This document shows, in pieces, positions 1 to 58,790 of a DNA stretch of 60,027 bases. Both the position numbers and the translations under genes were made by a program. Under the pieces are notes generated by a model. The model searched no databases and had not been told where the DNA came from. It was given only the letters and a program-made list of their open reading frames with translations. The stretch comes from Macrostomum lignano (Eukaryota). The stretch lies in assembly GCA_002269645.1 (NCBI GenBank), contig NIVC01004115.1, forward strand, positions 1-60,027, written 5' to 3'. Position 1 is the first letter of the stretch, and each line of letters begins with the position of its first letter.

Positions 1-3000
1 ACTCGTCCGCAGATGCGCTTGATCACACGTTTTGTCACGCGTCGTCCCTTAATGACTCGGCGTCGGATGATGCGCTTGATCACGCGTCGTATCTGGCGTC
101 GGCCCTTAGTCACTCGTTGCGGACGACTCGTCGGATGATGCGCTTGACCTTGCGGACGCTGCGTTTAATGCGTTTAACGATACGTCGCTTACTCACTCGT
201 CGGCGTCGGCGGCGGACTACTTTTCGGCGGACCACGCGCTTGCGGATCACTCGTCGGCAGATGCGCTTGATCACACGTTTTGTCACGCGTCGTCCCTTAA
301 TGACTCGGCGTCGGATGATGCGCTTGATCACGCGTCGTATCTGCGTCGGCCCTTAGTCACTCGTTTGCGGACGACTCGTCGGATGATGCGCTTGACCTTG
401 CGGACGCTGCGTTTAATGCGTTTAACGATACGTCGCTTACTCACTCGTCGGCGTCGGCGGCGGACTACTTTTCGGCGGACCACGCGCTTGCGGATCACTC
501 GTCGGCAGATGCGCTTGATCACACGTTTTGTCACGCGTCGTCCCTTAATGACTCGGCGTCGGATGATGCGCTTGATCACGCGTCGTATCTTGCGTCGGCC
601 CTTAGTCACTCGTTTGCGGACGACTCGTCGGATGATGCGCTTGACCTTGCGGACGCTGCGTTTAATGCGTTTAACGATACGTCGCTTACTCACTCGTCGG
701 CGTCGGCGGCGGACTACTTTTCGGCGGACCACGCGCTTGCGGATCACTCGTCGGCAGATGCGCTTGATCACACGTTTTGTCACGCGTCGTCCCTTAATGA
801 CTCGGCGTCGGATGATGCGCTTGATCACGCGTCGTATCTTGCGTCGGCCCTTAGTCACTCGTTTGCGGACGACTCGTCGGATGATGCGCTTGACCTTGCG
901 GACGCTGCGTTTAATGCGTTTAACGATACGTCGCTTACTCACTCGTCGGCGTCGGCGGCGGACTACTTTTCGGCGGACCACGCGCTTGCGGATCACTCGT
1001 CGGCAGATGCGCTTGATCACACGTTTTGTCACGCGTCGTCCCTTAATGACTCGGCGTCGGATGATGCGCTTGATCACGCGTCGTATCTGCGTCGGCCCTT
1101 AGTCACTCGTTTGCGGACGACTCGTCGGATGATGCGCTTGACCTTGCGGACGCTGCGTTTAATGCGTTTAACGATACGTCGCTTACTCACTCGTCGGCGT
1201 CGGCGGCGGACTACTTTTCGGCGGACCACGCGCTTGCGGATCACTCGTCGGCAGATGCGCTTGATCACACGTTTTGTCACGCGTCGTCCCTTAATGACTC
1301 GGCGTCGGATGATGCGCTTGATCACGCGTCGTATCTGCGTCGGCCCTTAGTCACTCGTTTGCGGACGACTCGTCGGATGATGCGCTTGACCTTGCGGACG
1401 CTGCGTTTAATGCGTTTAACGATACGTCGCTTACTCACTCGTCGGCGTCGGCGGCGGACTACTTTTCGGCGGACCACGCGCTTGCGGATCACTCGTCGGC
1501 AGATGCGCTTGATCACACGTTTTGTCACGCGTCGTCCCTTAATGACTCGGCGTCGGATGATGCGCTTGATCACGCGTCGTATCTGCGTCGGCCCTTAGTC
1601 ACTCGTTTGCGGACGACTCGTCGGATGATGCGCTTGACCTTGCGGACGCTGCGTTTAATGCGTTTAACGATACGTCGCTTACTCACTCGTCGGCGTCGGC
1701 GGCGGACTACTTTTCGGCGGACCACGCGCTTGCGGATCACTCGTCGGCAGATGCGCTTGATCACACGTTTTGTCACGCGTCGTCCCTTAATGACTCGGCG
1801 TCGGATGATGCGCTTGATCACGCGTCGTATCTGCGTCGGCCCTTAGTCACTCGTTTGCGGACGACTCGTCGGATGATGCGCTTGACCTTGCGGACGCTGC
1901 GTTTAATGCGTTTAACGATACGTCGCTTACTCACTCGTCGGCGTCGGCGGCGGACTACTTTTCGGCGGACCACGCGCTTGCGGATCACTCGTCGGCAGAT
2001 GCGCTTGATCACACGTTTTGTCACGCGTCGTCCCTTAATGACTCGGCGTCGGATGATGCGCTTGATCACGCGTCGTATCTTGCGTCGGCCCTTAGTCACT
2101 CGTTTGCGGACGACTCGTCGGATGATGCGCTTGACCTTGCGGACGCTGCGTTTAATGCGTTTAACGATACGTCGCTTACTCACTCGTCGGCGTCGGCGGC
2201 GGACTACTTTTCGGCGGACCACGCGCTTGCGGATCACTCGTCGGCAGATGCGCTTGATCACACGTTTTGTCACGCGTCGTCCCTTAATGACTCGGCGTCG
2301 GATGATGCGCTTGATCACGCGTCGTATCTTGCGTCGGCCCTTAGTCACTCGTTTGCGGACGACTCGTCGGATGATGCGCTTGACCTTGCGGACGCTGCGT
2401 TTAATGCGTTTAACGATACGTCGCTTACTCACTCGTCGGCGTCGGCGGCGGACTACTTTTCGGCGGACCACGCGCTTGCGGATCACTCGTCGGCAGATGC
2501 GCTTGATCACACGTTTTGTCACGCGTCGTCCCTTAATGACTCGGCGTCGGATGATGCGCTTGATCACGCGTCGTATCTTGCGTCGGCCCTTAGTCACTCG
2601 TTTGCGGACGACTCGTCGGATGATGCGCTTGACCTTGCGGACGCTGCGTTTAATGCGTTTAACGATACGTCGCTTACTCACTCGTCGGCGTCGGCGGCGG
2701 ACTACTTTTCGGCGGACCACGCGCTTGCGGATCACTCGTCGGCAGATGCGCTTGATCACACGTTTTGTCACGCGTCGTCCCTTAATGACTCGGCGTCGGA
2801 TGATGCGCTTGATCACGCGTCGTATCTTGCGTCGGCCCTTAGTCACTCGTTTGCGGACGACTCGTCGGATGATGCGCTTGACCTTGCGGACGCTGCGTTT
2901 AATGCGTTTAACGATACGTCGCTTACTCACTCGTCGGCGTCGGCGGCGGACTACTTTTCGGCGGACCACGCGCTTGCGGATCACTCGTCGGCAGATGCGC

Positions 3001-6000
3001 TTGATCACACGTTTTGTCACGCGTCGTCCCTTAATGACTCGGCGTCGGATGATGCGCTTGATCACGCGTCGTATCTTGCGTCGGCCCTTAGTCACTCGTT
3101 TGCGGACGACTCGTCGGATGATGCGCTTGACCTTGCGGACGCTGCGTTTAATGCGTTTAACGATACGTCGCTTACTCACTCGTCGGCGTCGGCGGCGGAC
3201 TACTTTTCGGCGGACCACGCGCTTGCGGATCACTCGTCGGCAGATGCGCTTGATCACACGTTTTGTCACGCGTCGTCCCTTAATGACTCGGCGTCGGATG
3301 ATGCGCTTGATCACGCGTCGTATCTTGCGTCGGCCCTTAGTCACTCGTTTGCGGACGACTCGTCGGATGATGCGCTTGACCTTGCGGACGCTGCGTTTAA
3401 TGCGTTTAACGATACGTCGCTTACTCACTCGTCGGCGTCGGCGGCGGACTACTTTTCGGCGGACCACGCGCTTGCGGATCACTCGTCGGCAGATGCGCTT
3501 GATCACACGTTTTGTCACGCGTCGTCCCTTAATGACTCGGCGTCGGATGATGCGCTTGATCACGCGTCGTATCTTGCGTCGGCCCTTAGTCACTCGTTTG
3601 CGGACGACTCGTCGGATGATGCGCTTGACCTTGCGGACGCTGCGTTTAATGCGTTTAACGATACGTCGCTTACTCACTCGTCGGCGTCGGCGGCGGACTA
3701 CTTTTCGGCGGACCACGCGCTTGCGGATCACTCGTCGGCAGATGCGCTTGATCACACGTTTTGTCACGCGTCGTCCCTTAATGACTCGGCGTCGGATGAT
3801 GCGCTTGATCACGCGTCGTATCTTGCGTCGGCCCTTAGTCACTCGTTTGCGGACGACTCGTCGGATGATGCGCTTGACCTTGCGGACGCTGCGTTTAATG
3901 CGTTTAACGATACGTCGCTTACTCACTCGTCGGCGTCGGCGGCGGACTACTTTTCGGCGGACCACGCGCTTGCGGATCACTCGTCGGCAGATGCGCTTGA
4001 TCACACGTTTTGTCACGCGTCGTCCCTTAATGACTCGGCGTCGGATGATGCGCTTGATCACGCGTCGTATCTTGCGTCGGCCCTTAGTCACTCGTTTGCG
4101 GACGACTCGTCGGATGATGCGCTTGACCTTGCGGACGCTGCGTTTAATGCGTTTAACGATACGTCGCTTACTCACTCGTCGGCGTCGGCGGCGGACTACT
4201 TTTCGGCGGACCACGCGCTTGCGGATCACTCGTCGGCAGATGCGCTTGATCACACGTTTTGTCACGCGTCGTCCCTTAATGACTCGGCGTCGGATGATGC
4301 GCTTGATCACGCGTCGTATCTTGCGTCGGCCCTTAGTCACTCGTTTGCGGACGACTCGTCGGATGATGCGCTTGACCTTGCGGACGCTGCGTTTAATGCG
4401 TTTAACGATACGTCGCTTACTCACTCGTCGGCGTCGGCGGCGGACTACTTTTCGGCGGACCACGCGCTTGCGGATCACTCGTCGGCAGATGCGCTTGATC
4501 ACACGTTTTGTCACGCGTCGTCCCTTAATGACTCGGCGTCGGATGATGCGCTTGATCACGCGTCGTATCTTGCGTCGGCCCTTAGTCACTCGTTTGCGGA
4601 CGACTCGTCGGATGATGCGCTTGACCTTGCGGACGCTGCGTTTAATGCGTTTAACGATACGTCGCTTACTCACTCGTCGGCGTCGGCGGCGGACTACTTT
4701 TCGGCGGACCACGCGCTTGCGGATCACTCGTCGGCAGATGCGCTTGATCACACGTTTTGTCACGCGTCGTCCCTTAATGACTCGGCGTCGGATGATGCGC
4801 TTGATCACGCGTCGTATCTTGCGTCGGCCCTTAGTCACTCGTTTGCGGACGACTCGTCGGATGATGCGCTTGACCTTGCGGACGCTGCGTTTAATGCGTT
4901 TAACGATACGTCGCTTACTCACTCGTCGGCGTCGGCGGCGGACTACTTTTCGGCGGACCACGCGCTTGCGGATCACTCGTCGGCAGATGCGCTTGATCAC
5001 ACGTTTTGTCACGCGTCGTCCCTTAATGACTCGGCGTCGGATGATGCGCTTGATCACGCGTCGTATCTTGCGTCGGCCCTTAGTCACTCGTTTGCGGACG
5101 ACTCGTCGGATGATGCGCTTGACCTTGCGGACGCTGCGTTTAATGCGTTTAACGATACGTCGCTTACTCACTCGTCGGCGTCGGCGGCGGACTACTTTTC
5201 GGCGGACCACGCGCTTGCGGATCACTCGTCGGCAGATGCGCTTGATCACACGTTTTGTCACGCGTCGTCCCTTAATGACTCGGCGTCGGATGATGCGCTT
5301 GATCACGCGTCGTATCTTGCGTCGGCCCTTAGTCACTCGTTTGCGGACGACTCGTCGGATGATGCGCTTGACCTTGCGGACGCTGCGTTTAATGCGTTTA
5401 ACGATACGTCGCTTACTCACTCGTCGGCGTCGGCGGCGGACTACTTTTCGGCGGACCACGCGCTTGCGGATCACTCGTCGGCAGATGCGCTTGATCACAC
5501 GTTTTGTCACGCGTCGTCCCTTAATGACTCGGCGTCGGATGATGCGCTTGATCACGCGTCGTATCTTGCGTCGGCCCTTAGTCACTCGTTTGCGGACGAC
5601 TCGTCGGATGATGCGCTTGACCTTGCGGACGCTGCGTTTAATGCGTTTAACGATACGTCGCTTACTCACTCGTCGGCGTCGGCGGCGGACTACTTTTCGG
5701 CGGACCACGCGCTTGCGGATCACTCGTCGGCAGATGCGCTTGATCACACGTTTTGTCACGCGTCGTCCCTTAATGACTCGGCGTCGGATGATGCGCTTGA
5801 TCACGCGTCGTATCTTGCGTCGGCCCTTAGTCACTCGTTTGCGGACGACTCGTCGGATGATGCGCTTGACCTTGCGGACGCTGCGTTTAATGCGTTTAAC
5901 GATACGTCGCTTACTCACTCGTCGGCGTCGGCGGCGGACTACTTTTCGGCGGACCACGCGCTTGCGGATCACTCGTCGGCAGATGCGCTTGATCACACGT

Positions 6001-9000
6001 TTTGTCACGCGTCGTCCCTTAATGACTCGGCGTCGGATGATGCGCTTGATCACGCGTCGTATCTTGCGTCGGCCCTTAGTCACTCGTTTGCGGACGACTC
6101 GTCGGATGATGCGCTTGACCTTGCGGACGCTGCGTTTAATGCGTTTAACGATACGTCGCTTACTCACTCGTCGGCGTCGGCGGCGGACTACTTTTCGGCG
6201 GACCACGCGCTTGCGGATCACTCGTCGGCAGATGCGCTTGATCACACGTTTTGTCACGCGTCGTCCCTTAATGACTCGGCGTCGGATGATGCGCTTGATC
6301 ACGCGTCGTATCTTGCGTCGGCCCTTAGTCACTCGTTTGCGGACGACTCGTCGGATGATGCGCTTGACCTTGCGGACGCTGCGTTTAATGCGTTTAACGA
6401 TACGTCGCTTACTCACTCGTCGGCGTCGGCGGCGGACTACTTTTCGGCGGACCACGCGCTTGCGGATCACTCGTCGGCAGATGCGCTTGATCACACGTTT
6501 TGTCACGCGTCGTCCCTTAATGACTCGGCGTCGGATGATGCGCTTGATCACGCGTCGTATCTTGCGTCGGCCCTTAGTCACTCGTTTGCGGACGACTCGT
6601 CGGATGATGCGCTTGACCTTGCGGACGCTGCGTTTAATGCGTTTAACGATACGTCGCTTACTCACTCGTCGGCGTCGGCGGCGGACTACTTTTCGGCGGA
6701 CCACGCGCTTGCGGATCACTCGTCGGCAGATGCGCTTGATCACACGTTTTGTCACGCGTCGTCCCTTAATGACTCGGCGTCGGATGATGCGCTTGATCAC
6801 GCGTCGTATCTTGCGTCGGCCCTTAGTCACTCGTTTGCGGACGACTCGTCGGATGATGCGCTTGACCTTGCGGACGCTGCGTTTAATGCGTTTAACGATA
6901 CGTCGCTTACTCACTCGTCGGCGTCGGCGGCGGACTACTTTTCGGCGGACCACGCGCTTGCGGATCACTCGTCGGCAGATGCGCTTGATCACACGTTTTG
7001 TCACGCGTCGTCCCTTAATGACTCGGCGTCGGATGATGCGCTTGATCACGCGTCGTATCTTGCGTCGGCCCTTAGTCACTCGTTTGCGGACGACTCGTCG
7101 GATGATGCGCTTGACCTTGCGGACGCTGCGTTTAATGCGTTTAACGATACGTCGCTTACTCACTCGTCGGCGTCGGCGGCGGACTACTTTTCGGCGGACC
7201 ACGCGCTTGCGGATCACTCGTCGGCAGATGCGCTTGATCACACGTTTTGTCACGCGTCGTCCCTTAATGACTCGGCGTCGGATGATGCGCTTGATCACGC
7301 GTCGTATCTTGCGTCGGCCCTTAGTCACTCGTTTGCGGACGACTCGTCGGATGATGCGCTTGACCTTGCGGACGCTGCGTTTAATGCGTTTAACGATACG
7401 TCGCTTACTCACTCGTCGGCGTCGGCGGCGGACTACTTTTCGGCGGACCACGCGCTTGCGGATCACTCGTCGGCAGATGCGCTTGATCACACGTTTTGTC
7501 ACGCGTCGTCCCTTAATGACTCGGCGTCGGATGATGCGCTTGATCACGCGTCGTATCTTGCGTCGGCCCTTAGTCACTCGTTTGCGGACGACTCGTCGGA
7601 TGATGCGCTTGACCTTGCGGACGCTGCGTTTAATGCGTTTAACGATACGTCGCTTACTCACTCGTCGGCGTCGGCGGCGGACTACTTTTCGGCGGACCAC
7701 GCGCTTGCGGATCACTCGTCGGCAGATGCGCTTGATCACACGTTTTGTCACGCGTCGTCCCTTAATGACTCGGCGTCGGATGATGCGCTTGATCACGCGT
7801 CGTATCTTGCGTCGGCCCTTAGTCACTCGTTTGCGGACGACTCGTCGGATGATGCGCTTGACCTTGCGGACGCTGCGTTTAATGCGTTTAACGATACGTC
7901 GCTTACTCACTCGTCGGCGTCGGCGGCGGACTACTTTTCGGCGGACCACGCGCTTGCGGATCACTCGTCGGCAGATGCGCTTGATCACACGTTTTGTCAC
8001 GCGTCGTCCCTTAATGACTCGGCGTCGGATGATGCGCTTGATCACGCGTCGTATCTTGCGTCGGCCCTTAGTCACTCGTTTGCGGACGACTCGTCGGATG
8101 ATGCGCTTGACCTTGCGGACGCTGCGTTTAATGCGTTTAACGATACGTCGCTTACTCACTCGTCGGCGTCGGCGGCGGACTACTTTTCGGCGGACCACGC
8201 GCTTGCGGATCACTCGTCGGCAGATGCGCTTGATCACACGTTTTGTCACGCGTCGTCCCTTAATGACTCGGCGTCGGATGATGCGCTTGATCACGCGTCG
8301 TATCTTGCGTCGGCCCTTAGTCACTCGTTTGCGGACGACTCGTCGGATGATGCGCTTGACCTTGCGGACGCTGCGTTTAATGCGTTTAACGATACGTCGC
8401 TTACTCACTCGTCGGCGTCGGCGGCGGACTACTTTTCGGCGGACCACGCGCTTGCGGATCACTCGTCGGCAGATGCGCTTGATCACACGTTTTGTCACGC
8501 GTCGTCCCTTAATGACTCGGCGTCGGATGATGCGCTTGATCACGCGTCGTATCTTGCGTCGGCCCTTAGTCACTCGTTTGCGGACGACTCGTCGGATGAT
8601 GCGCTTGACCTTGCGGACGCTGCGTTTAATGCGTTTAACGATACGTCGCTTACTCACTCGTCGGCGTCGGCGGCGGACTACTTTTCGGCGGACCACGCGC
8701 TTGCGGATCACTCGTCGGCAGATGCGCTTGATCACACGTTTTGTCACGCGTCGTCCCTTAATGACTCGGCGTCGGATGATGCGCTTGATCACGCGTCGTA
8801 TCTTGCGTCGGCCCTTAGTCACTCGTTTGCGGACGACTCGTCGGATGATGCGCTTGACCTTGCGGACGCTGCGTTTAATGCGTTTAACGATACGTCGCTT
8901 ACTCACTCGTCGGCGTCGGCGGCGGACTACTTTTCGGCGGACCACGCGCTTGCGGATCACTCGTCGGCAGATGCGCTTGATCACACGTTTTGTCACGCGT

Positions 9001-9350
9001 CGTCCCTTAATGACTCGGCGTCGGATGATGCGCTTGATCACGCGTCGTATCTTGCGTCGGCCCTTAGTCACTCGTTTGCGGACGACTCGTCGGATGATGC
9101 GCTTGACCTTGCGGACGCTGCGTTTAATGCGTTTAACGATACGTCGCTTACTCACTCGTCGGCGTCGGCGGCGGACTACTTTTCGGCGGACCACGCGCTT
9201 GCGGATCACTCGTCGGCAGATGCGCTTGATCACACGTTTTGTCACGCGTCGTCCCTTAATGACTCGGCGTCGGATGATGCGCTTGATCACGCGTCGTATC
9301 TTGCGTCGGCCCTTAGTCACTCGTTTGCGGACGACTCGTCGGATGATGCG
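1..9350 (-). repeat. 249-bp coding tandem array (~37.5 units, running off the window start)
   Basis: Units appear identical by eye. Five units carry a single-T deletion (gtatctgcg instead of gtatcttgcg at ~342, 1088, 1336, 1584, 1832), and there are two further differences near 95 and 117. Confidence 0.98.
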
Positions 9351-12300
9351 CTTGATATTGCGACACTTGCAGATCATGTTTCCGTGAATTGTTACTGGGC
9401 TTCTGCGTTTTTGGATTTGGATGGGCTTTTTTGCTATTTTAGCCGCCCTTCGGGATATGAATCCTTTTCTGAAGAAAGCGCGTTTAACAAGCCTTAGTCT
9501 GCGTTTTGTCAGTGGCTTCTTTTTTAGCTTTCGCATGACTTTTCGCTGGAACCTTTTGTTAATCTTTCTGAGCTTTTTACCGAATCGCGTCTTTGCCTTG
9601 ACTATCCTCTTTTTGAATCGCTGAACTCTGCGCTGGAGTCTGGCCTTGTACCTGAGGCGCATCTTTTGAAGAAACTTCTGGTACAACTGCTTCTTCTCTC
9701 GCAGCCTCTGGCGGTAGAGACGCAGCTTCATCAGCAGCAGCTTAGTCTTGTAGCGGGCCTTGTAGATCCGCTTGGCAGCAGCCATGATTTTGCGCTTATC
9801 GATGGCGCACTTCTCAGGCGACCGCTTTGTAGCTGGAAACGCGGGTTTCTGGTTGTTGGCACAAGGTTTATAAAATAATTTTTATCATATTTAAAGCTGA
9901 GATTGGCAGCTTAGTAGTCTTTTGTCTACCTCTGAATATGTAGATTGGCAACTGCGACAAAACTACGTACTATATAACGTTGTGCTTTCTTTTTTTGAAA
10001 ACAACGGGCCTTGGATTTGATTGCGTCCCATATTTTGACATTCTGTGGCAACGCCAGCTGGAAAGCTCAAACTATTTGAATAAGCTCAGATTCCATTCGA
10101 CAAATTACAGCTTGTTTTTTTGACAAAGGGGATGTTAAACTTAAGAGTCAAATCCGACCACTTTAGCATTTGGGATCTGTATGGGGAGAGGGCCGGCAGC
10201 TCGGACAGGTGGGGCGCCTCCAGTTGCTGTTGGGCCAGTGTGGGGATGAGATGGACTACGGCTCAGGGTTGGTGTTGGGGTTCAGGGACAAGCTTAGGGT
10301 TTATGGAATGGAGTTTAGGGTTCAAGGGATGGAGTTTAGGGTTCAGGTGGTGGAGTTTAGGGTTCAGGTGGTGGAGTTTAGGGTTCAGGTGGTGGAGTTT
10401 AGGGTTCAGGTGGTGGAGTTTAGGGTTCAGGTGGTGGAGTTTAGGGTTCAGGTGGTGGAGTTTAGGGTTTTGTCTCTTCTGGACACGGAGAAATGGGATA
10501 AATTGGGATTTCATGTGATCGGAAAACTTTCCTGTGTTATTTTGAGTTGAATATGTTTTCATTGTGTTTTCCAGGACTCCAGTATACAGCCCTTTATGAA
10601 ACATTGTACCAAAACTTGTCGTTAGTTACGCAAGAATGTAAGGCATGCACGTTTAGGAGTGACGGAAGAATGTTAAGCGTTAAGTTGTGGTTTTTCACGT
10701 GGAATCCCCATTTATCCAATTTCTCCCCACAGAGATCCCCAAATGCTAAAGTGGTCGGGCTTTCTGCATAACGGGAGATGTTTGGCTCCAAATGAAGGGA
10801 TTGGCGTAGAGAAATCGGGACCCAATTATTCAGGCTCCATTTTGACTCCTAAGTTTACATCCTCTTTAGTCTTTATTGACAGTAAATTGTCAGAAAAGGT
10901 TGAAGTTGTCAATTTCCTGTGCCCGTTTTCTTAAAAAAGGAACAATATAAGGAGATCCCATAGATTAGGCTCTTGCATAATCTATGGAAAAAGATACACG
11001 AGCGACACGAGACTGGCCACGTATCACTACTTGGTGTGCGCTTGCTGGGCTTCATAAAAGGAATAACATTTCCACTATTTCTGCTCCAGCGCTACGGATG
11101 CCGTCAGATAGTTATGGGTCTCACTGTGCTTGGTACTCCTACTTTAGTTGCAAATAGAAGGCTTGGATTTCAAGGCGAGCGTTTGAGCTGGACACTCTTG
11201 GACTGCATTTGAGTACGAGGCATCAGGGCACCGTTGGGAAAGAGGCGGCCGTGTTCTAACGGAACTCACCCGCTTTGAAGCCGGTTTTGAGAATCAGGTT
11301 GCGCCAGAACCCTCCGCAGGTCTGCACGCGGGATCCGTTGCACGGCTTGTTGCACTCCGAGCCCTGGGCGCGGCCATGCCTACCGTAGCTGTTGCCGCAC
11401 CGGCACTCGTTGCCGTTCTGCACTCCAGCGTAGCTGAACCGCAGCTTGAAGCACTGGGCAGCGCAGGCCGCAGGCGTCACGGAGCCCAGCCTGGCCAGCT
11501 TGGGCAGGTCGCGCGGCTTCGCCTTGTCCTTGAAGCAGCCGACGCTGGGCGGCTTCTTGATTGCCTCTGCGAGGATTTGTTGTGTTACTGAGTTAGGGGG
11601 GGGGCTTTCTCACCCGGGGATTTCGGTCGCGGTGGACACACTGTAGGGAAATTCCAGTCCTACAGTGAACATCCCAGAAAGACCGGCATTATTAGCAGTG
11701 TATAAAAACCTGTTGCGATAGAAAAGAACAGGAAAGAGTGTCCAATGCGGGGGAAGAAGCGTCCAAGGCGGGGGAAAGAGTGTCTAAGGGGAGGGAGTGT
11801 CCGAAAGACAGGAAAGATGCCCAAAGGACCAGAGGACAGGAAGTGTCCAAAGAACAGGACAGGACGCAGTGGAACATTTAGCATGCATTTACCGGTATGT
11901 ATATGAGATTCGCCAATAGGCAAGAGATGTCTAAGAGCGATTGAAACAAAGGACACAGTGGAACATTTAGCATGCATTTACCGGTATGCATGAGATTCGC
12001 CAATAGGCAAGAGATGTCTAAGAGCGATTGAAACAAAGGACGCAGTGGAACATTTAGCATGCATTTACCGGTATGTATATGAGATTCGCCAATAGGCAAG
12101 AGATGTCTAAGAGCGATTGAAACAAAGGACGCAGTGGAACATTTAGCATGCATTTACCGGTATGTATATGAGATTCGCCAATAGGCAAGAGATGTCTAAG
12201 AGCGATTGAAACAAAGGACGCAGTGGAACATTTAGCATGCATTTACCGGTATGTATATGAGATTCGCCAATAGGCAAGAGATGTCTAAGAGCGATTGAAA

Positions 12301-12855
12301 CAAAGGACGCAGTGGAACATTTAGCATGCATTTACCGGTATGTATATGAGATTCGCCAATAGGCAAGAGATGTCTAAGAGCGATTGAAACAAAGGACGCA
12401 GTGGAACATTTAGCATGCATTTACCGGTGTGTATGAGATTCGCCAATAGGCAAGAGATGTATAAGAGCGATTGAAACAAAGGACACAGTGGAACATTTAG
12501 CATGCATTTACCGGTATGTATGAGATTCGCCAATAGGCAAGAGATGTCTAAGAGCGATTGAAACAAAGGACACAGTGGAACATTTAGCATGCATTTACCG
12601 GTATGTATGAGATTCACCAATAGGCAAGAGATGTCTAAGAGCGATTGAAACAAAGGACGCAGTGGAACATTTAGCATGCATTTACCGGTATGTATGAGAT
12701 TCGCCAATAGGCAAGAGATGTCTAAGAGAGATTGAAACAAAGGACACAGGCTAACACAACAGCTTACTCTTGGCTGGAAGGCTGGATAAGCTGGCACCAT
12801 TGGCGGACATGGCTGCCCAGACAGCGAGGATCAGCAGCAGCAGCCAGAGCCTCAT
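1818..12855 (-). CDS. Giant secreted polycationic protein: signal peptide + WSC domain + basic linker + ~30 x 83-aa Arg/Lys/Val/Ile repeats (~2799 aa, 3 exons)
   Basis: Exon 1 12855-12768 (88 nt, MRLWLLLLILAVWAAMSANGASLSSLPAK, donor A|GTAAGC, phase 1). Exon 2 11566-11270 (297 nt, acceptor cctcgcAG, 8-Cys WSC domain SVGCFKD...ECRCGNSYG...CNKPC...TCGG, donor G|GTGAGT, phase 1). Exon 3 9832-1818 (acceptor gtttccAG, phase 1, reads ATKRSPEKCAIDKRKI directly into MAAAKRIYK of the 2655-aa ORF). Total 8400 nt, in frame. The 3' end is uncertain because of frameshifting repeat units. Confidence 0.8.
10154..10758. mobile_element. Non-autonomous TIR element (MITE-like) whose left arm is interrupted by an insert carrying a TTAGGG-containing 21-bp repeat
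   Basis: CCGACCACTTTAGCATTTGGG at 10154 is the inverse of CCCAAATGCTAAAGTGGTCGG ending at 10758. The arm continues at ~10485-10517 as the inverse of ~10696-10730. No clear TSD. Confidence 0.55.
10262..10470 (+). repeat. 21-bp minisatellite GGTGGTGGAGTTTAGGGTTCA
   Basis: About 9 imperfect copies, G-rich, each containing TTAGGG. Confidence 0.9.
11270..11566 (-). CDS. WSC-domain exon (exon 2 of the giant polycation gene)
   Basis: AIKKPPSVGCFKDKAKPRDLPKLARLGSVTPAACAAQCFKLRFSYAGVQNGNECRCGNSYGRHGRAQGSECNKPCNGSRVQTCGGFWRNLILKTGFKA; eight cysteines in WSC spacing; canonical AG/GT boundaries. Confidence 0.9.
11862..12749. repeat. 85-89-bp intronic tandem repeat (~10 copies)
   Basis: Unit ggacgcagtggaacatttagcatgcatttaccggtatgtatatgagattcgcc...gaaacaaa, in intron 1 of the WSC-polycation gene. 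Confidence 0.95.
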
Positions 12856-14059
12856 GTTGAGTCCGGCCGCCGCTTGCGAAGCAATGTTTGCTGATGACAA
12901 CCGGCCAGCAATGCAGTTGCCTGGTTGAGATTTTTTGCAGCAGAGTTTCGTTTGTCAAAACAGACAAGCTGGCTGTGGAGTTTCTCGCTCCGCAGGTTCT
13001 CTCTTCTGCCAACGGTTGATCCAAATGGGGGACTCACCGTGGTTAGCTGGGGGACTTCGGAGAGAAGTGAGGCTTCAGGCGAAGAGCCAGCTGGCTGGTG
13101 GGCCGGCGGTTTTATCGCGCTGCCGATACCAGCATTGCGGCCTTCGTGCTGCGTCGATCGCGCCACCACCCGCCTGACCGCCCCCCCCCTCCTTACCCTC
13201 CGCGGACCATCGCCGTTTCTGCGAAGGAAGCGCTACAAAAAACCAGCTGGCCTCGAGACCGAGCTGCCGCTGCTTTTGTTTTACTCTTCCGGAGCCTCCC
13301 GGGCTTGCAGCCGTCGACAGCAACGCCGGGGAGGTGGGGGTGGGGCACTGGTGCGGTCCTCTACTCTCCGCCCCTCTCCGCCAGGCCACCCACGGCCGAG
13401 AGTTGCTGATTCAGCAGGTGGAGCTCCTGGCCAGCCCCCCAAGCCCCCCGCTCTGCAGTAATCGATTCAGCGATACTTCAGCAAGTTGGCAGCCGCAACG
13501 CTGCGCTGTCTTGGGTGGTGCCGGAATGACGAGCAACTGCAACCACTGGCTGCGCCCAGCAGTGCCCAACTCGCATTACCAACCCCCCCCCCTCAGTCCA
13601 GAGCTGGCAGAGTCCTGCACCCGCAAATTGGAGAACTCGAAAGTCATAAACAGCGCCAGAGAGAATCGATCAGCCTCTCCCTGCTCAACTCAACCACCCA
13701 GAGCTCCAGTTCGAGGATAAATTCCAGGGCATCGAAAGCTGCCGAAAACAAAAAATAAACAACAACAGAAGACGCAACACTTGAACTGAAAAGTGAACAG
13801 CAAACTAAACAAATGCCGTGTGCGGATATCAATATCAAACAGTCGCGTTTTATCTGATTATGAATTCTTTAACAAACTCAATCCGTGAAGCAGCTGAATT
13901 AACTATCAGCACTGACTAGTTGGGACACTGCGAATAAAATATTAAGACTGCAAGCACTGCGATAGCGCAAGCTTTGAAAATAAGTAGCTCGTAATATCGA
14001 ATGCTCTTCGCGATTAGTAAGTGCAATAAGAGAAAACTTATTGAAACACGGAAACAAGG

Positions 14060-16089: not shown

Positions 16090-19000
16090 CTAGGCCGCGC
16101 CGCTGAGCTGCAGCTGTCGCAGCTTCTCGATCAGCTGAGCCACGGTCAGCATGGCCCTGCTCAGGTGCAGCAGCAAGTCGTTCAGCCAGGGCACCACGGC
16201 CTGTCCGTGGTAGCGGCCGCTGATGTCGTAGGATTTTGTCCGGGTGTTGTAGTGCAGGAAGTACACAGCCAGCACCAGGCGGCGACCGCTGACGTACATC
16301 GACAGGCTCATGTCGTTGGGCACCGGGGGATGGAACACCTCCTGTTTGATGCGTTCATCATCAGCACTAATTAAGATCAAGAATATGCAAAATGCTCTCA
16401 TAATGAATTCTGGAGCAGTCAATGAGATAATAGAGAAACGCTAGAGAACACGCAACAGAATATCAATTATAACACCGATTATAAAACTCATTAGAACACT
16501 AATTAGAACACCGAATACAACATCAATTAAAACACTTATTAGATCAGAACACCAATTAGAACACTAATCAGAACACTAATCAGAACACCAATTAGAACAC
16601 CAATTAGAACACTATTCAGAATACCAATTAGAACATTGATCAGAATACCAATTAGAACACTAATCAGAACACCAATTGGAACACTAATCAGAACACCAAT
16701 TAGAACACTAATCAGAACACCAATTAGAACACTGATCAGAACACTAATCAGAACACCAATTAGAAGACACTACTAATCAGAACACTTACCAGAACACCAA
16801 TTAGAACACTGATCAGAACACCAATTGGAACACTAATCAGAACACCAATTAGAACACTAATCAGAACACCAATTAGAACACTGATCAGAACACTAATCAG
16901 AACACCAATTAGAAGACACTACTAATCAGAACACTTACCAGAACACCAATTAGAACACTGATCAGAACACCAATTCGAACACTAATCAGAACACTAATCA
17001 GAACACCAATTAGAAGACACTACTAATCAGAACACTTACCAGAACACCAATTAGAACACCAATTAGAACACCAATTAGAACACTAATTATAACACTAATC
17101 AGAACACCAATTAGAACACTAATTAGAACACTAATCAGAACACCAATTAGAACACTAATCAGAACACCAATTAGAACACTAATTAGAACACTACTAATTA
17201 GAACACCAATTAGAACACTAATCAGAACACCAATTGGAACACTAATCAGAACACCAATTAGAACACTAATCAGAACACTAATCAGAACACCAATTAGAAC
17301 ACTAATTAGAACACTAATTAGAACACCAATTAGAACACTAATTAGAACAATAATCAGAACACCAATTAGAACACTACTAATCAGAACACCAATTAGAACA
17401 CTAATCAGAACACCAATTGGAACACTAATCAGAACACCAATTAGAACACTAATCAGAACACTAATCAGAACACCAATTAGAACACTAATTAGAACACTAA
17501 TTAGAACACCAATTAGAACACTAATTAGAACAATAATCAGAACACCAATTAGAACACTACTAATCAGAACACCAATTAGAACACTACTAATCAGAACACC
17601 AATTCGAACACCAATCATAACACCAATTTAAAAATTTACAAGAACAGCCACAAGAAAGGCGGGCTTCCCCACCTTGTGCCGGCTGTGCGCGAGCTCCTCA
17701 ACGGATTTCTTCTGCGGCAGCACCACGTGGTCCCGCGCGGACTTCAGGCAGGCAAAAATTCGGTCCAGGGTCTCGAGGGTCCGCGCCGGCTCGGACTGGC
17801 AGCCGACCTCGCAGGCCTGCTGGATGCAGAGCTTGGCGGCCTGGAGGGTGCTGCCGCAGCCGATGAGCTGCGGATTTGGCAGATTTGTGGGCGGCTCAGG
17901 TGAGCTTCTCAGCGCGAATCCTCTAGATGAGTTCCGATGTCTCTACCGGTAGATGTGCCCAGATGTCTAGAGGGGAATTACAATCTCATGAAAAATCGCA
18001 AGGGCGTCTAAAAAGTTTTCACTGTCTTTAGAGAGGCCGGGCTTAGAGGTCAAAAGAAGATCTCCAGAGGTCTCAAGATTGTCTTGCGACGTTTCAGAGT
18101 CTTTAGAGGGGTCTCAGTCTCGTGTTCTCTGTCCAGATGTCCAAGTGTCTATAGATGGGTATCAGTGCTGTCTGTAGATGTTTCCGTGTCTCTAGATGGG
18201 TGCCAGTGTTGTCTGCAGATGTCCCAGTGTCTATATGGTATTAGTGTTGTCTGTAGATGTCCCAGTGTCTATAGATGGATGCCAGTGTTGTCTGTAGATG
18301 TCCCAGTGTCTATAGATTGGTGCCAGTGTTGTCTGTAGATGTCCCAGTGTCTATAGATTGGTGCCAGTGTTGTCTGTAGATGTCCCAGTGTCTATAGATT
18401 GGTGCCAGTGTTGTCTGTAGATGTCCCAGTGTCTATAGATGGATGCCAGTGTTGTCTGTAGATGTCCCAGTGTCTATAGATGGTGCCAGTGCTGCCTGTG
18501 GATGTCCCATGGTATCTATAGGCCCCAGAGTACACTGAGTCGCCGGCAGAATACTCTATATGCTATATGCAGTGCATGTTTTCAACAGACAAGTATTGTA
18601 ATCGATAGAGTATTTGCGTGCACAAAAATGCACACAGAAGACTTCTGGAAGGTTCCAGCACATTCGTAAACAGAGTTCAGCCAGAGTAATAAAAGAGCAG
18701 GTTGCTTCAAGGCGCATTGCTGAATTGCGATATGGTTTGAAACTGCTGAAAGCAGCAGAACCGCGGCTCGTGAGGGTGGCGGTGGGTGTGGGGGCAGAAC
18801 CGGTCCGAAGCAGAGTTGGGCTGCATTTCTGCTTGCAGTTGCTTCTTTTGCGACAGATCGAGCGGTTGAGGAGACAAACCCGCAGAGGGCGGTGCAACTG
18901 CCAGGGGTGGCGGGGGTTCGGGAGTTCCTGCACAGCTCACTCACAGCTGCCCCTACACGCCTCCCCGGCCGAGGCAAGGGCGAAGCCAGCCGGACAGTGC

Positions 19001-19825
19001 GCGATCCCCAGCAGCGCCCAGTGACAAAATTATAACTCCAAAAATGAGCTCACCTGCTGCAGCTTGTAGGAACTGCCTTCGGCTATGCCGCAGCGGTAGA
19101 ACTGCTTGAAGGGGCTCTCGACGCTGATGTCCTGCGGCGCGAGGGAGAGGTCGGTTCTACATTATTCACACACTGGCGTTGGTCATTCACGCACTGGCTT
19201 TGGTCATTCACGCACTGGCTTTGGTCATTCACGCACTGGCTTTGGTCATTCACGCACTGGCTTTGGTCATTCACGCACTGGCTTTGGTCATTCACACGCT
19301 GGCTTTGGTCATTCACGCACTGGCTTTGATTATTCACGCACTGGCTTTGGTCATTCACACACTGGCTTTGATTATTCACGCACTGGCTTTGGTCATTCAC
19401 GCACTAGCTTGACCATTCACGCACTGGCTTTGGTCATTCACGCACATGTATATCATTCACGCATCCAACTATCGGTCACCATTTAGGAATGAGCATTCAC
19501 TCTTTGACTAGAAGTTCATTCTAAATACAATAAAGTATAGGCTAAGAGTACAGTTGGAACTTACTGCTTCTGTTATCTCGTCTCCATTGAGAGTGACTAC
19601 TGCTTTGAGACTGCACTGTCTAAAATTTAGCAACATTGAGATTAAAGTTAAGATAAACAAATTTGCACTGGTACCATTAGACATTCTGGGTACTCACTCA
19701 TTGGGAGTGAACAGAAATTTACTGGCAGGTTGGGCAAGCTTCTTTTCAGACTGGTCCACAATAACTTGCAACTGTTGTAAAGTGGCAATGTACTCACGCT
19801 CAAGAAGCCAAGCCAGCTCATCCAT
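16090..19825 (-). CDS. ROGDI: Rogdi-family protein (Rav2/Rabconnectin-3 V-ATPase assembly subunit), 235 aa, 5 exons
   Basis: Exons 19825-19698 (MDELAWLLEREYIATLQQLQ...), 19619-19565 (QCSLKAVVTLNGDEITEA), 19131-19054 (DISVESPF...YKLQQ), 17867-17673 (LIGCG...LDRIFACLKSARDHVVLP...), 16341-16090 (EVFHPPVPNDMSLSMYV...VVPWLNDLLLHL). All GT-AG and phase-consistent (708 nt). Motifs recognised from ROGDI (EFRWLL, KGVLTLQGD, WKLQQ, VIPWLND). Confidence 0.9.
16490..17625. repeat. 12-bp minisatellite (AGAACACCAATT/AGAACACTAATC) in ROGDI intron 4
   Basis: Direct inspection. Confidence 0.95.
18165..18500. repeat. 39-bp minisatellite in ROGDI intron 3
   Basis: Unit gatgtcccagtgtctatagattggtgccagtgttgtctgta. 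Confidence 0.9.
19170..19445. repeat. 21-bp minisatellite in ROGDI intron 2
   Basis: Unit tggctttggtcattcacgcac. Confidence 0.95.
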
Positions 19826-37633: not shown

Positions 37634-37914
37634 GCCGCCACCGCCGCCGCCGCCGCCGTCCGACTCGATGTCGCTGTTGAGATTTTTGGTGTCGGACCAG
37701 AGACTGGCCGGCCGCTCCACTCGGGCACCCCAGCTCTCCGCTCTCACCAGGCCGCTGGTGGACCGGCGCAGGCCGCCTCCGCCGCCGCCTCTGCCTCTGT
37801 TGTTGTGAAGCGCTCTGGTCAGCAGCGACCAGATGAGCCGCTGATGAGGATGCAACTTGCTCAGGGGATGCAGCGGGTGGCGGGCGGAATTTGGTGGTCA
37901 AATTCGTTCTATAA

Positions 37915-55544: not shown

Positions 55545-58790
<3,246 letters not shown>

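What the first reader, a model, noticed from the sequence alone, without database searches (positions are those of the whole stretch)
1818..12855. Hidden architecture: a ~2,800-aa secreted WSC lectin fused to a 2,500-residue polycation
Seen in sequence: three exons join with matching phase-1 junctions into signal peptide, basic 8-Cys WSC domain, ~180-aa basic linker, then ~30 copies of an 83-aa unit (34 R, 14 K, 16 V, 12 I, 2 G, 2 T, 2 S, 1 C; no D/E, no aromatics). Established: WSC domains bind carbohydrate, and protamine-like proteins are nuclear and have no signal peptide. The M. lignano adhesive Mlig-ap1 has large K/R-rich regions, but as I recall with C-type lectin/EGF/vWD/C8/TIL domains rather than WSC. 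Inference: this is a glycan-targeted secreted polycation, possibly a glue or coacervate, a rhabdite or mucus component, or a membrane-lytic defence or prey-capture polymer. I do not recognise this domain architecture.
Basis: partly seen in the sequence, partly recalled or inferred. Interest (0 to 1): 0.95.

Follow-up and report, generated by a model that had tools for sequence, protein, structure and literature searches.

The report
Flatworm secreted WSC-lectin giant polycation gene
The window holds a real gene of the flatworm Macrostomum lignano, annotated only in fragments, whose reading frame joins a signal peptide and a sugar-binding WSC domain to at least 2,500 residues of an arginine/lysine/valine/isoleucine repeat; it looks like a new variant of the giant secreted polycations these worms use in their glue, but its tissue and its true length are unknown.

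Summary
On the minus strand, three GT-AG exons (12855-12768, 11566-11270, 9832 onward) give one 2,799-codon frame. It encodes a signal peptide, an 8-Cys WSC domain (Pfam E=7.6e-18), a 169-aa basic linker and 30.3 copies of an 83-aa unit with exactly the stated composition.

The window is the whole contig NIVC01004115.1 of the M. lignano Mlig_3_7 assembly. GenBank annotates a 213-aa "partial" WSC protein (Mlig029036.g11) that uses both predicted junctions, plus six separate 164-aa fragments inside the array. The fused architecture is therefore unannotated, but the gene is not unknown.

Three caveats apply:
- The array runs off the contig end.
- The stop at 1818 comes from a 1-nt deletion at a site that is A/C-polymorphic between units, so it is probably an assembly artefact.
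- Linker-to-array continuity in mRNA was not shown.

Giant secreted polycations are already known in flatworm adhesion (Mlig-ap1 flanks, Mile-ap3, Tmed-ap3). This one differs in three ways: a WSC head, an R/K/V/I amphipathic-helix composition instead of G/R/K/H/S, and no lectin/vWD/EGF core.

Most likely it is a glycan-anchored electrostatic binder or cohesive polymer of a gland secretion. The gland is unknown; other M. lignano WSC proteins are prostate-limited. I rate it a new variant of a known kind, of moderate interest.

The parts
13038..13200 (-). 5' UTR exon. Its upstream limit was not determined; it extends at least to about 13200.
   Evidence: UniProt models P0001 and P0007 begin with a translation of this stretch. 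They then skip 13037-12921 (...EVPPANHG|NCIAGRL...).
12921..13037 (-). 5' UTR intron, 117 nt, GT...AG
   Evidence: Read against P0001 and P0007.
12768..12855 (-). Coding part of exon 1: ATG plus signal peptide (MRLWLLLLILAVWAAMSANG|ASL...). It ends in phase 1.
   Evidence: The segment is identical in PAA48566.1. The signal peptide is judged from the sequence: one basic residue, a 14-residue hydrophobic core, then A at -3 and G at -1. No SignalP run was possible.
11567..12767 (-). Intron 1. It holds an 87-nt x 10 tandem array at 11861-12749.
   Evidence: In the paralogue L001 this intron is 793 nt shorter.
11270..11566 (-). Exon 2: a phase 1-1 exon of 297 nt that encodes the complete 8-Cys WSC domain and one NGS sequon.
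   Evidence: Pfam PF01822 E=7.6e-18. Human Kremen1 WSC E=2.9e-14 and yeast Wsc1 E=5.9e-5. Cys positions and sequon.
9833..11269 (-). Intron 2. It holds a 21-nt x 7.7 array at 10309-10469.
9363..9832 (-). Exon 3, unique part: the basic linker (41% K+R, 3 Cys). Its first ~100 residues are predicted as one long alpha-helix.
   Evidence: AlphaFold2 gives helix 5-104 with pLDDT above 90 over most of it, from a single sequence. Against the paralogue, codons 1-241 differ at 7 synonymous and 4 non-synonymous codons, dN/dS 0.17, P=0.005.
1893..9362 (-). Exon 3, array: 30 units of 249 nt (83 aa), identical at the nucleotide level except 2 nt in unit 0, in frame with the linker.
   Evidence: GenBank places several 164-aa fragment genes here on the same strand and in the same frame. 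The unit has no in-frame ATG, so it can be translated only from upstream.
1818..1820 (-). TGA that ends the frame in this assembly (C-terminus ...VTKGRRRYDA*). It is reached 4 codons after a 1-nt deletion at 1833.
1..1892 (-). Distal 7.6 units of the same array, running to the contig end. Units 30-33 and 36 lack one A at unit position 60 (window 1833, 1585, 1337, 1089, 343). Unit 37 has C at that position, a deletion at position 36 (window 119) and a C>G substitution at position 147 (window 8). Apart from these changes the units still encode the polycation.
   Evidence: In the paralogous array the same position is C in 12 units, A in a few, deleted in 4 and carries a 1-nt insertion in 2.

Best explanation
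This is a transcribed protein-coding gene of Macrostomum lignano (Mlig029036.g11 on contig NIVC01004115.1). Its annotation is broken up by a coding tandem array.

Its product enters the secretory pathway and has three parts:
- a single basic WSC carbohydrate-binding domain;
- a strongly basic helical stalk of about 100 residues;
- a tail of at least 30 identical 83-aa units, 58% Arg+Lys and 34% Val+Ile, with almost no acidic residues and one Cys per unit.

Each unit consists of roughly 19-residue segments with a '++hh' pattern, separated by Gly, Ser or Thr.

Proposed mechanism (inferred):
1. The WSC head docks the protein on a glycan.
2. The tail binds polyanions (sulfated or carboxylated glycans, glycocalyx, mineral or biofilm surfaces) by charge.
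3. Once neutralised, the segments fold into amphipathic helices, and their Val/Ile faces and Cys residues hold the material together.

The protein would thus act as a cohesive or condensing polymer of a gland secretion, as proposed for the K/R-rich regions of Mlig-ap1 and for ap3 of other flatworms.

Shown here: the gene structure, the domains, the composition and the annotation status. Inferred: secretion, glycan binding, the polyanion mechanism and the gland. Mature length is unknown, because the array is incompletely assembled and the stop at 1818 is probably an artefact.
For: Gene and architecture:
- GT-AG phase-1 junctions and a single 2,799-codon frame.
- The junctions are reproduced in GenBank PAA48566.1 and in three UniProt models from an independent assembly. 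One of them (P0002) runs from the signal peptide into the first repeat unit.
- A spliced 5' UTR is visible in P0001 and P0007.
- The GenBank annotation comes from a genome-guided transcriptome assembly built from RNA-seq reads and de novo transcripts, not from ab initio gene prediction (PMC5730564). It places fragments in the array on the same strand and in the same frame.
- dN/dS is 0.17 (P=0.005) over codons 1-241 against the paralogue.
- The unit has no in-frame ATG, and only one sense frame is open.
- Nucleotide self-similarity of the unit shows a 3-nt periodicity.
- The paralogous locus L001 has the same layout and the same Rogdi neighbour.

Properties:
- WSC domain.
- Net charge about +1,529, 355 kDa, 41 Cys.
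- Helical hydrophobic moment 0.55, against 0.35 +/- 0.07 in shuffles; 3 of 1000 shuffles reach it.
- AlphaFold2 predicts helices, with low confidence for the repeat and high confidence for the stalk.

Precedent: Mlig-ap1 has more than 3,600 aa of K/R-rich regions with pI above 14. It is secreted, is essential for adhesion and is blocked by heparin (PMC6410801). Mile-ap3 and Tmed-ap3 are a signal peptide followed by a giant polycation (PMC9229212).
Against: - No expression site is known for this gene. No paper mentions Mlig029036, and four supplement sets did not list it.
- mRNA continuity from the linker into the array is not directly shown. The GenBank CDS stops, flagged partial, at 9579 within the linker.
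- The composition differs from the known adhesive polycations: no Gly/His/Ser richness, and one third Val+Ile.
- The lectin/vWD/EGF core of ap1 is absent.
- Comparisons between sub-repeats show no excess of third-position changes. The only evidence for selection on the repeat itself is its periodic pattern.
- No relative with this linker or tail was found outside M. lignano. Searches with the repeat alone were uninformative.
- Other WSC proteins of this worm are prostate-limited, which points away from the adhesive glands.
Confidence: 0.5

Rival explanations
1. Seminal-fluid polycation. The gene belongs to the prostate-expressed WSC family of M. lignano. Its product is transferred with the ejaculate, where the polycation sticks the ejaculate or sperm to the partner's antrum glycocalyx or condenses the secretion. 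The chemistry is that of the best explanation, in a specific and different gland.
For: - Many prostate-limited transcripts (putative seminal fluid proteins) in M. lignano are WSC-domain proteins (Weber 2018, Table S1).
- RNA815_80.4, with two WSC domains, is prostate-specific (Arbore 2015).
- A second small WSC gene lies in the same window, and its domain is 43% identical.
Against: - This rests on family association only. None of those transcripts could be matched to this gene.
- They are about 1-kb transcripts, and no polybasic tail is reported for them.
- WSC proteins also appear in the footprint and tail proteomes.
Confidence: 0.2
2. Membrane-active defence or prey-directed polymer, or a polyprotein precursor. 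The WSC head targets beta-glucan or chitin-like walls of microbes or diatoms. The cationic amphipathic helices permeabilise membranes, either as a polymer or after cleavage at the many dibasic sites.
For: - About 19-residue cationic segments with a significant helical hydrophobic moment.
- Four R-X-K/R-R motifs and 28 dibasic pairs per unit.
- WSC domains of fungi bind glucans (established knowledge, not tested here).
- A DM9 lectin-type gene and a second WSC gene lie nearby.
Against: - There are no acidic spacers or pro-pieces, and no defined peptide boundaries as in known multi-peptide precursors.
- Dibasic sites are so dense that convertase processing would shred the peptides.
- There is no evidence of expression in epidermis, gut or pharynx.
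Confidence: 0.12
3. The array is not translated as a giant tail. The functional product would be only the ~300-aa WSC plus basic-helix protein. The 249-nt array would then be a satellite that happens to be open in frame, lying in a 3' UTR or removed by splicing or early polyadenylation.
For: - The genome is about 15% tandem repeats and this window is full of them.
- 34% of shuffled units have an open frame, and 3 of the 6 real frames are open.
- The GenBank CDS ends at 9579, next to a possible GT donor and an A-rich stretch.
- Sub-repeat differences show no codon-position bias.
Against: - There is no stop codon between the linker and the array for 7.5 kb.
- The period is a multiple of 3.
- The only open sense frame is the one in register with the linker.
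- The linker has the same basic, helical character (alignment score 121 against 95 +/- 11 in shuffles).
- The unit shows a significant amphipathic pattern.
- The same worm demonstrably makes polycations of more than 3,600 aa.
Confidence: 0.13
4. The real gene in the array is on the plus strand. It would encode the Asp/Ser/Ala-rich or the Arg/Thr/Leu-rich antisense frame and enter from beyond the contig start.
For: Two antisense frames of the unit are open.
Against: - All annotated models are on the minus strand.
- The plus-strand frames simply stop at about 9384, with no exon structure.
- Antisense openness follows from complementarity to CGN, AAG, GTC and ATC codons.
- A protein search with the Asp/Ser/Ala frame found nothing.
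Confidence: 0.03

Closest known systems
Mlig-ap1, the cohesive adhesion protein of Macrostomum lignano (Wunderer et al. 2019, PMC6410801)
   Same: It comes from the same organism and is secreted. It has thousands of residues of tandemly repeated Lys/Arg-rich sequence with extreme pI, combined with a carbohydrate-binding module. Its proposed action is electrostatic binding to negatively charged glycans, which is blocked by heparin.
   Different: Mlig-ap1 has K/R regions at both ends, described as Gly/Arg/Lys-rich, around a core of C-type lectin, vWD/C8/TIL and 17 EGF-Ca modules. The present protein has one WSC domain, no such core, a tail at the C-terminal side only, and an R/K/V/I composition with helical amphipathic periodicity. 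Direct sequence comparison was not possible, because no Mlig-ap1 sequence was on hand. Motifs taken from the published antibody peptide SRKPRRKNRKSRKP (RKPRRK, RKNRK) are absent from all six frames of the window.
ap3 of other flatworms: Mile-ap3 (Minona ileanae) and Tmed-ap3 (Theama mediterranea) (PMC9229212)
   Same: Each is a stand-alone secreted protein: a signal peptide followed almost entirely by a giant low-complexity polycation (Tmed-ap3 is about 3,700 aa).
   Different: In Tmed-ap3, 88% of residues are K, R, G, H or S, with no lectin domain reported. Here G is 2.4%, H is 0% and V+I is 34% of the unit, and a WSC domain and a helical stalk precede the tail. ap3 is expressed in adhesive glands, whereas the expression site of this gene is unknown.
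WSC-domain proteins of M. lignano (prostate-limited Mlig-pro transcripts, RNA815_80.4; multi-WSC proteins such as A0A1I8JE00)
   Same: They share a secreted WSC module of the same family. The second WSC exon in this window is 43% identical.
   Different: Those are small proteins with one or two WSC domains, or long multi-WSC proteins. None of the hits retrieved outside this gene's own copies covers the basic linker or has a comparable polybasic tail.
Mytilus edulis XP_071162416.1 (uncharacterized protein, 2,816 aa)
   Same: It has a signal peptide, lectin modules including WSC, and a long, very basic repeat region (about 40% K+R), in an animal that makes protein glues.
   Different: Its basic repeats are Cys-rich, presumably folded EGF-like modules rather than Cys-poor amphipathic helices. 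Apart from the WSC domain there is no sequence relationship. Its function is unknown.
Protamines and sperm nuclear basic proteins
   Same: Extreme arginine content.
   Different: Those are small nuclear proteins without a signal peptide or a lectin domain. Here an N-terminal signal peptide and an extracellular-type disulfide domain precede the tail.

Membership tests
WSC domain (Pfam PF01822) | Match to the family profile above the curated threshold, over the full domain length | tested here: met
   65 bits against a cut-off of 27.8, E=7.6e-18, profile positions 2-82 of 82.
WSC domain (Pfam PF01822) | Eight conserved cysteines within about 80 residues | tested here: met
   Cys at residues 40, 64, 68, 84, 86, 101, 105 and 113.
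WSC domain (Pfam PF01822) | Sequence relationship to WSC domains of solved structure | tested here: met
   Human Kremen1 WSC E=2.9e-14; yeast Wsc1 cysteine-rich domain (7PZ2) E=5.9e-5.
WSC domain (Pfam PF01822) | Carbohydrate binding | not testable with these tools
   Needs a glycan array or pull-down with recombinant domain.
Flatworm adhesion protein 1 (Mlig-ap1 type) | Very large Lys/Arg-rich repetitive regions with extreme positive charge | tested here: met
   2,502 aa at 58% K+R, net charge about +1,445. The composition differs from the published G/R/K type.
Flatworm adhesion protein 1 (Mlig-ap1 type) | Core of C-type lectin, vWD/C8/TIL and EGF-Ca modules | tested here: not met
   Pfam finds only WSC in the unique part. 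The gene model has no further exons before the array.
Flatworm adhesion protein 1 (Mlig-ap1 type) | Expression in adhesive gland cells, presence in footprints, and a non-adhesive RNAi phenotype | not testable with these tools
   No expression data could be linked to Mlig029036.
Flatworm adhesion protein 3 (Mile-ap3 / Tmed-ap3 type) | Signal peptide followed by a giant low-complexity polycation as the bulk of the protein | tested here: met
   Signal peptide judged from the sequence. The array makes up 89% of the model.
Flatworm adhesion protein 3 (Mile-ap3 / Tmed-ap3 type) | GRKHS-type composition (K, R, G, H and S together about 88%) | tested here: not met
   The unit has R 34, K 14, V 16, I 12, G 2, S 2, H 0 out of 83 residues.
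Flatworm adhesion protein 3 (Mile-ap3 / Tmed-ap3 type) | Expression in adhesive glands | not testable with these tools
   As above.
Protamine / sperm nuclear basic protein | Small nuclear protein with no signal peptide | tested here: not met
   N-terminal hydrophobic signal sequence and a disulfide-rich extracellular-type domain; at least 2,799 aa.
Multi-copy antimicrobial peptide precursor | Repeated cationic amphipathic peptides separated by spacers or pro-pieces with defined processing sites | tested here: inconclusive
   The amphipathic cationic segments are present. There are no acidic spacers, and dibasic pairs occur 28 times per unit, so no discrete peptide boundaries can be read.
Non-coding satellite DNA | No frame continuity with neighbouring exons, and no protein-level pattern | tested here: not met
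   The period is 3x83. The only open sense frame is in register with the linker for 7.5 kb. The amphipathic pattern exceeds all but 3 of 1000 shuffles.

The most novel reading that the evidence does not exclude
The protein is not an adhesive homologue. It would instead be a previously unrecognised type of extracellular effector: a lectin-guided polymer of about 120 or more cationic amphipathic helices that folds on contact with polyanionic glycans or membranes. It would be used in the ejaculate (to manipulate or anchor in the partner) or as a contact weapon or defence against walled microbes or diatom prey. The coding array would be kept perfectly homogeneous by very rapid concerted evolution.
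Probability: 0.15. Interest if true: 0.8.

Novelty: new variant of a known kind. Interest (0 to 1): 0.58.

Why it matters
If the full-length protein exists, it adds a second, chemically different giant polycation to the one flatworm in which temporary adhesion can be dissected by RNAi and transgenesis. The new chemistry is hydrophobic-basic and helix-forming, with a lectin head. That bears on how charge-driven biological glues and secretions are built, packaged and released, and on biomimetic coacervate design.

The finding is also a concrete case of a coding tandem array that breaks both assembly and annotation. The gene is split into a "partial" 213-aa protein and several 164-aa orphan fragments, which means large secreted repeat proteins are likely under-counted in this genome.

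The possible link to the prostate-expressed WSC family would make the gene relevant to work on seminal fluid and sexual conflict in this model.

Tried and rejected
1. Protein searches with three repeat units and with the antisense Asp/Ser/Ala frame returned nothing. They did not even return the fragments annotated on this contig, so they say nothing about conservation. HMMER composition filters probably suppress the polybasic match.
2. An exact look-up of my translation of a 164-aa annotated fragment was not found in the collection. The deposited product may be phased differently.
3. The look-up of encoding contigs for the UniProt models P0001 and P0002 found nothing on record.
4. Literature:
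   - No paper mentions Mlig029036.
   - No main text combines Macrostomum with 'WSC domain'. 'WSC' as a whole word occurs only in Arbore 2015, for a different gene.
   - Supplements of Grudniewska 2018, Weber 2018, Brand 2020 and the 2026 aneuploidy paper do not list the gene.
   - The Wunderer 2019 proteomes list other WSC proteins (for example RNA1310_2275_2, pI 8.1) but no peptides of this repeat. That is expected after tryptic digestion.
   - The Mlig-ap1 sequence is not held as text, so a direct alignment was impossible.
5. A search on rhabdite chemistry led nowhere.
6. A coiled-coil reading of the linker was rejected as unsupported. Its 3.75-residue periodicity is matched by 249 of 1000 shuffles.
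7. A codon-position test between the 57-nt sub-repeats showed no third-position excess. It gives no evidence either way on selection within the unit.
8. AlphaFold2 of three units gave pLDDT 49. I use it only as weak support for helical propensity and did not take it to fold search.
9. Spliced protein sequences could not be handed to the structure or representative searches. P0001 and a contiguous exon-3 reference were used instead.


Full report
**What the window is.** The first protein search gave 98% identity to UniProt A0A1I8GNH5, a "WSC domain-containing protein" of Macrostomum lignano. The cluster look-up showed that GenBank PAA48566.1 (BOX15_Mlig029036g11, "hypothetical protein, partial", 213 aa) lies on a contig of exactly 60,027 bp. 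Fetching that contig returned the reverse complement of window 1-22855. The window is therefore the whole contig NIVC01004115.1 of assembly Mlig_3_7 (GCA_002269645.1). That assembly was made with Canu from PacBio CLR reads and polished with Pilon using Illumina and RNA-seq reads. Its annotation comes from a genome-guided transcriptome assembly (PMC5730564).

**Checking the observation.** On the minus strand:
- Exon 1 is 12855-12768 (88 nt), exon 2 is 11566-11270 (297 nt), and exon 3 runs from 9832.
- All junctions have canonical GT-AG borders and both are phase 1.
- The joined frame is open for 2,799 codons, up to TGA at 1820-1818.

The product starts with MRLWLLLLILAVWAAMSANG|AS. This has one basic residue, a 14-residue hydrophobic core and small residues at -3 and -1, so I read it as a signal peptide from the sequence; no predictor was available.

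- Exon 2 encodes a complete WSC domain: Pfam PF01822, 65 bits, E=7.6e-18, profile positions 2-82 of 82. It has eight Cys and pI 10.1. Its closest solved relatives are the WSC domain of human Kremen1 (E=2.9e-14) and yeast Wsc1 (E=5.9e-5).
- A 169-aa linker follows, with 41% K+R.
- The array follows the linker. TRF reports period 249, 37.6 copies, score 18654, over window 1-9362.
- The model as assembled is 355 kDa with a net charge of about +1,529 and 41 Cys.

**Independent support for the exon joins.** PAA48566.1 equals residues 1-213 of my model. It therefore contains both junctions (...LPAKK|AIKK... and ...GFKA|ATKRSP...). UniProt models from the older ML2 assembly (P0001, P0007, P0002) contain them too. 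P0001 and P0007 also reveal a 117-nt 5' UTR intron at 13037-12921. P0002 runs from the signal peptide through the linker into the first repeat unit.

A paralogous or homeologous locus at the end of contig NIVC01001863.1 (L001, Mlig029036.g1) has the same layout:
- a Rogdi gene upstream, then the WSC gene, then the same 249-nt array;
- about 99% identity to the window in both exons and introns;
- over codons 1-241, 7 synonymous and 4 non-synonymous codon differences, giving dN/dS 0.17 and P=0.005 for so few replacements. This is modest but real evidence that the unique part is under purifying selection.

**Is the array coding?** An open frame in a repeat unit is weak evidence by itself. Three of the six frames of the unit are open, and 34% of mononucleotide shuffles have at least one open frame.

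The arguments that count are these:
- The period is 3x83.
- Only one sense frame is open, and it is the one in register with the linker. There is no stop for 7.5 kb.
- The unit contains no in-frame ATG. If it is translated at all, translation must start upstream.
- Nucleotide self-similarity of the unit is higher at shifts that are multiples of 3.
- The residues are arranged non-randomly, in a '++hh' pattern. The helical hydrophobic moment is 0.55, against 0.35 +/- 0.07 in shuffles, and 3 of 1000 shuffles reach it.
- The linker resembles the unit in order as well as in composition (alignment score 121 against 95 +/- 11; 10 of 500 shuffles reach it).
- GenBank places six 164-aa gene fragments inside the array, on the same strand and in the same frame.
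- The same animal is known to make and secrete more than 3,600 aa of K/R-rich sequence in Mlig-ap1.

Against this, differences between the 57-nt sub-repeats show no third-position excess. The GenBank CDS also ends, flagged partial, at 9579 inside the linker. That position lies next to an A-rich stretch and a possible GT. I suspect a false poly(A) cut in Lys-rich coding sequence, but I could not test this.

I put the probability that the WSC head and the polycation belong to one translated frame at about 0.85.

**The length and the stop codon.**
- Units 0-29 (9362-1893) are identical at the nucleotide level apart from 2 nt in unit 0.
- The array does not end at 1818. It continues to position 1, the contig end.
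- The frame breaks because units 30, 31, 32, 33 and 36 each lack one A at unit position 60 (CGCAAGATA becomes CGCAGATA; window 1833, 1585, 1337, 1089, 343).
- Unit 37 has C at that position.
- In the paralogous array the same position is C in 12 units (Lys to Gln), A in a few, deleted in 4, and carries a 1-nt insertion in 2. Other indels in that array are scattered.
- P0002, from another assembly, ends in a +1 frameshift at the same place.
- Apart from the changes in unit 37 noted below, every distal unit still encodes the polycation in a shifted frame.

Frame-breaking indels concentrated at a genuinely A/C-polymorphic dinucleotide, in a PacBio-CLR assembly polished with multi-mapping short reads, look like consensus errors. 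I estimate about 65% that the stop at 1818 is an artefact.

The alternative is that the first frameshifted unit is the real C-terminus and the distal units are untranslated. This is coherent and cannot be excluded. Either way, the copy number and the 3' end are not determined by this contig.

**Structure.**
- AlphaFold2, from a single sequence, predicts residues 5-104 of exon 3 as one continuous helix, with pLDDT above 90 over most of it.
- Its 3.75-residue periodicity is not significant against shuffles, so I do not call it a coiled coil.
- Three repeat units give only low confidence (pLDDT 49), with helices interrupted at the Gly/Ser/Thr positions.
- I take the tail to be disordered when it carries full charge, with a propensity to form amphipathic helices once neutralised. 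This is an inference.

**Comparison with what is known.** Mlig-ap1 has K/R regions A-C of more than 3,600 aa, with pI above 14, flanking a core of C-type lectin, vWD/C8/TIL and 17 EGF-Ca modules. It is secreted by the adhesive glands and is needed for attachment. Heparin blocks attachment, and free Lys, Arg or a cationic peptide block release (PMC6410801). Later papers describe those flanks as Gly/Arg/Lys-rich. They also show that in Minona ileanae and Theama mediterranea the flanks form a separate secreted protein, ap3. Tmed-ap3 is a signal peptide followed by about 3,700 aa that are 88% K, R, G, H and S (PMC8621496 and PMC9229212).

A giant secreted polycation is therefore an established kind of molecule in flatworms. 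The present gene differs in three ways:
- It has a WSC head. Neither 'WSC' nor this gene is mentioned in those papers.
- It lacks the ap1 core; Pfam finds nothing but WSC.
- One third of the tail is Val+Ile in a helical pattern, with almost no Gly, no His and no Pro.

Motifs taken from the Mlig-ap1 antibody peptide (RKPRRK, RKNRK) do not occur in any frame of the window. A direct alignment with Mlig-ap1 was not possible.

An exhaustive HMMER search with P0001 found 5,969 proteins. All matched through the WSC part only. Only the two M. lignano clusters cover the linker.

Among the top hits, one has a long basic region: Mytilus edulis XP_071162416.1. It has a signal peptide, SUEL and WSC lectin modules and about 40% K+R Cys-rich repeats. 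It is a loose analogue, not a relative.

**Where it might act.** I could not tie any expression data to this gene. The one lead is by family:
- many prostate-limited transcripts (putative seminal-fluid proteins) of M. lignano are WSC proteins (Weber 2018, Table S1);
- the prostate-specific RNA815_80.4 has two WSC domains (Arbore 2015);
- the window itself holds a second small WSC gene (exon 51577-51867, plus strand, 43% identical), followed by a DM9-repeat gene.

The adhesive reading and the prostate reading share the same chemistry and differ only in the gland. I keep them as the best explanation and the first rival.

**Mechanism proposed.**
1. The signal peptide takes the protein into the secretory pathway.
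2. A polycation of this size has to be packaged with a counter-polyanion or kept condensed in granules.
3. After release, the WSC domain docks on a glycan.
4. The tail binds polyanionic glycans or surfaces by charge.
5. Neutralisation lets the ~19-residue segments fold into amphipathic helices.
6. The Val/Ile faces of those helices, and the one Cys per unit, give cohesion.

Shown here: the sequence features. Inferred: every functional step. Confidence in this general mechanism is about 0.5.

**Verdict.** The gene is real and its full architecture is not annotated. However, the 5' part is already in the databases, the length is assembly-dependent, and giant secreted polycations are already known in flatworm adhesion. 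I rate it a new variant of a known kind, with interest 0.58. The interest would rise if long-read cDNA confirms the fusion and in situ data place it in a defined gland.

Noticed in passing
window 51577-51867 (+), with the 15-nt x 43.5 array at 50916-51567 just upstream: A second WSC-domain exon (Pfam E=3.8e-17, 43% identical to the first). It starts after a ttccag acceptor and ends at a TGA. The (TCACACCAGCTCCCA)n array that abuts it is open in three frames and lies in the same long ORF (HHTSS repeats), so a repeat-plus-WSC reading is formally possible here too. More likely the array is intronic.
   Followed up: partly
window 52347-52805 (+): A single-exon ORF of 152 aa with a DM9 repeat domain (Pfam PF11901, E=3.6e-28), directly downstream of the second WSC exon. 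No obvious signal peptide.
   Followed up: partly
window 1893-9362: Thirty consecutive 249-nt units are 100% identical at the nucleotide level. This is either extremely recent amplification or homogenisation, or homogenisation by Pilon polishing with multi-mapping reads. The paralogous array (L001 13146-18475) is much less clean.
   Followed up: partly
L001 12640-13146 (NIVC01001863.1): In the paralogue the last ~55 codons of the linker are replaced by partial, frameshifted repeat units, with an in-frame stop after ...KKKPLTKRRLNGLS. This is either a pseudogenised copy or a local misassembly. Two UniProt models (P0002, P0007) support the window's version of the linker.
   Followed up: partly
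window 1-9384 (+): Two antisense frames of the array are also open: an Asp/Ser/Ala/Leu/His-rich frame and an Arg/Thr/Leu/Met-rich frame. This follows from complementarity to CGN, AAG, GTC and ATC codons. No evidence of use was found.
   Followed up: yes
window 11861-12749 and 10309-10469: Both introns of the WSC gene carry their own tandem arrays (87 nt x 10 and 21 nt x 7.7). Intron 1 is 793 nt shorter in the paralogue, so the copy number of the intronic array differs between the two copies.
   Followed up: no
window 16090-19825 (-) and from about 22306 onward (+): The neighbouring annotated genes are a Rogdi leucine-zipper family gene (235 aa) and, on the other strand, an EGF/EGF-Ca protein (528 aa; EGF-like ORF at 26486-27088). 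The Rogdi-WSC order is conserved at the paralogous locus.
   Followed up: partly
window 30431-32355 (+): Two long ORFs (474 aa at 30431-31855 and 148 aa at 31909-32355) that by eye look like retroelement gag and pol: a Cys/His zinc-knuckle motif, then a possible protease region, then a possible start of reverse transcriptase. They were not run against Pfam or any other profile library.
   Followed up: no
window 34794-37855 (-): Long ORFs that by eye look like exons of a DEAD-box RNA helicase (AETGSGKT, VLDEADR and HRVGRTGR motifs). A 22/44-nt array (36651-37109) sits open in frame inside the 5' ORF and is presumably intronic. They were not run against Pfam.
   Followed up: no
window 49295-50393, 55790-56079 and throughout: Perfect (TGAC)275 and (TTAG)72 microsatellites, and about 100 TRF rows in 60 kb. 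Many arrays are open in several frames, so long ORFs in this genome need independent evidence.
   Followed up: no
P0068 (Mytilus edulis XP_071162416.1): A mussel protein with a signal peptide, a SUEL lectin, WSC domains and about 900 aa of ~40% K+R Cys-rich repeats. It may be an independent case of lectin plus polybasic repeat in an adhesive-secreting animal.
   Followed up: partly
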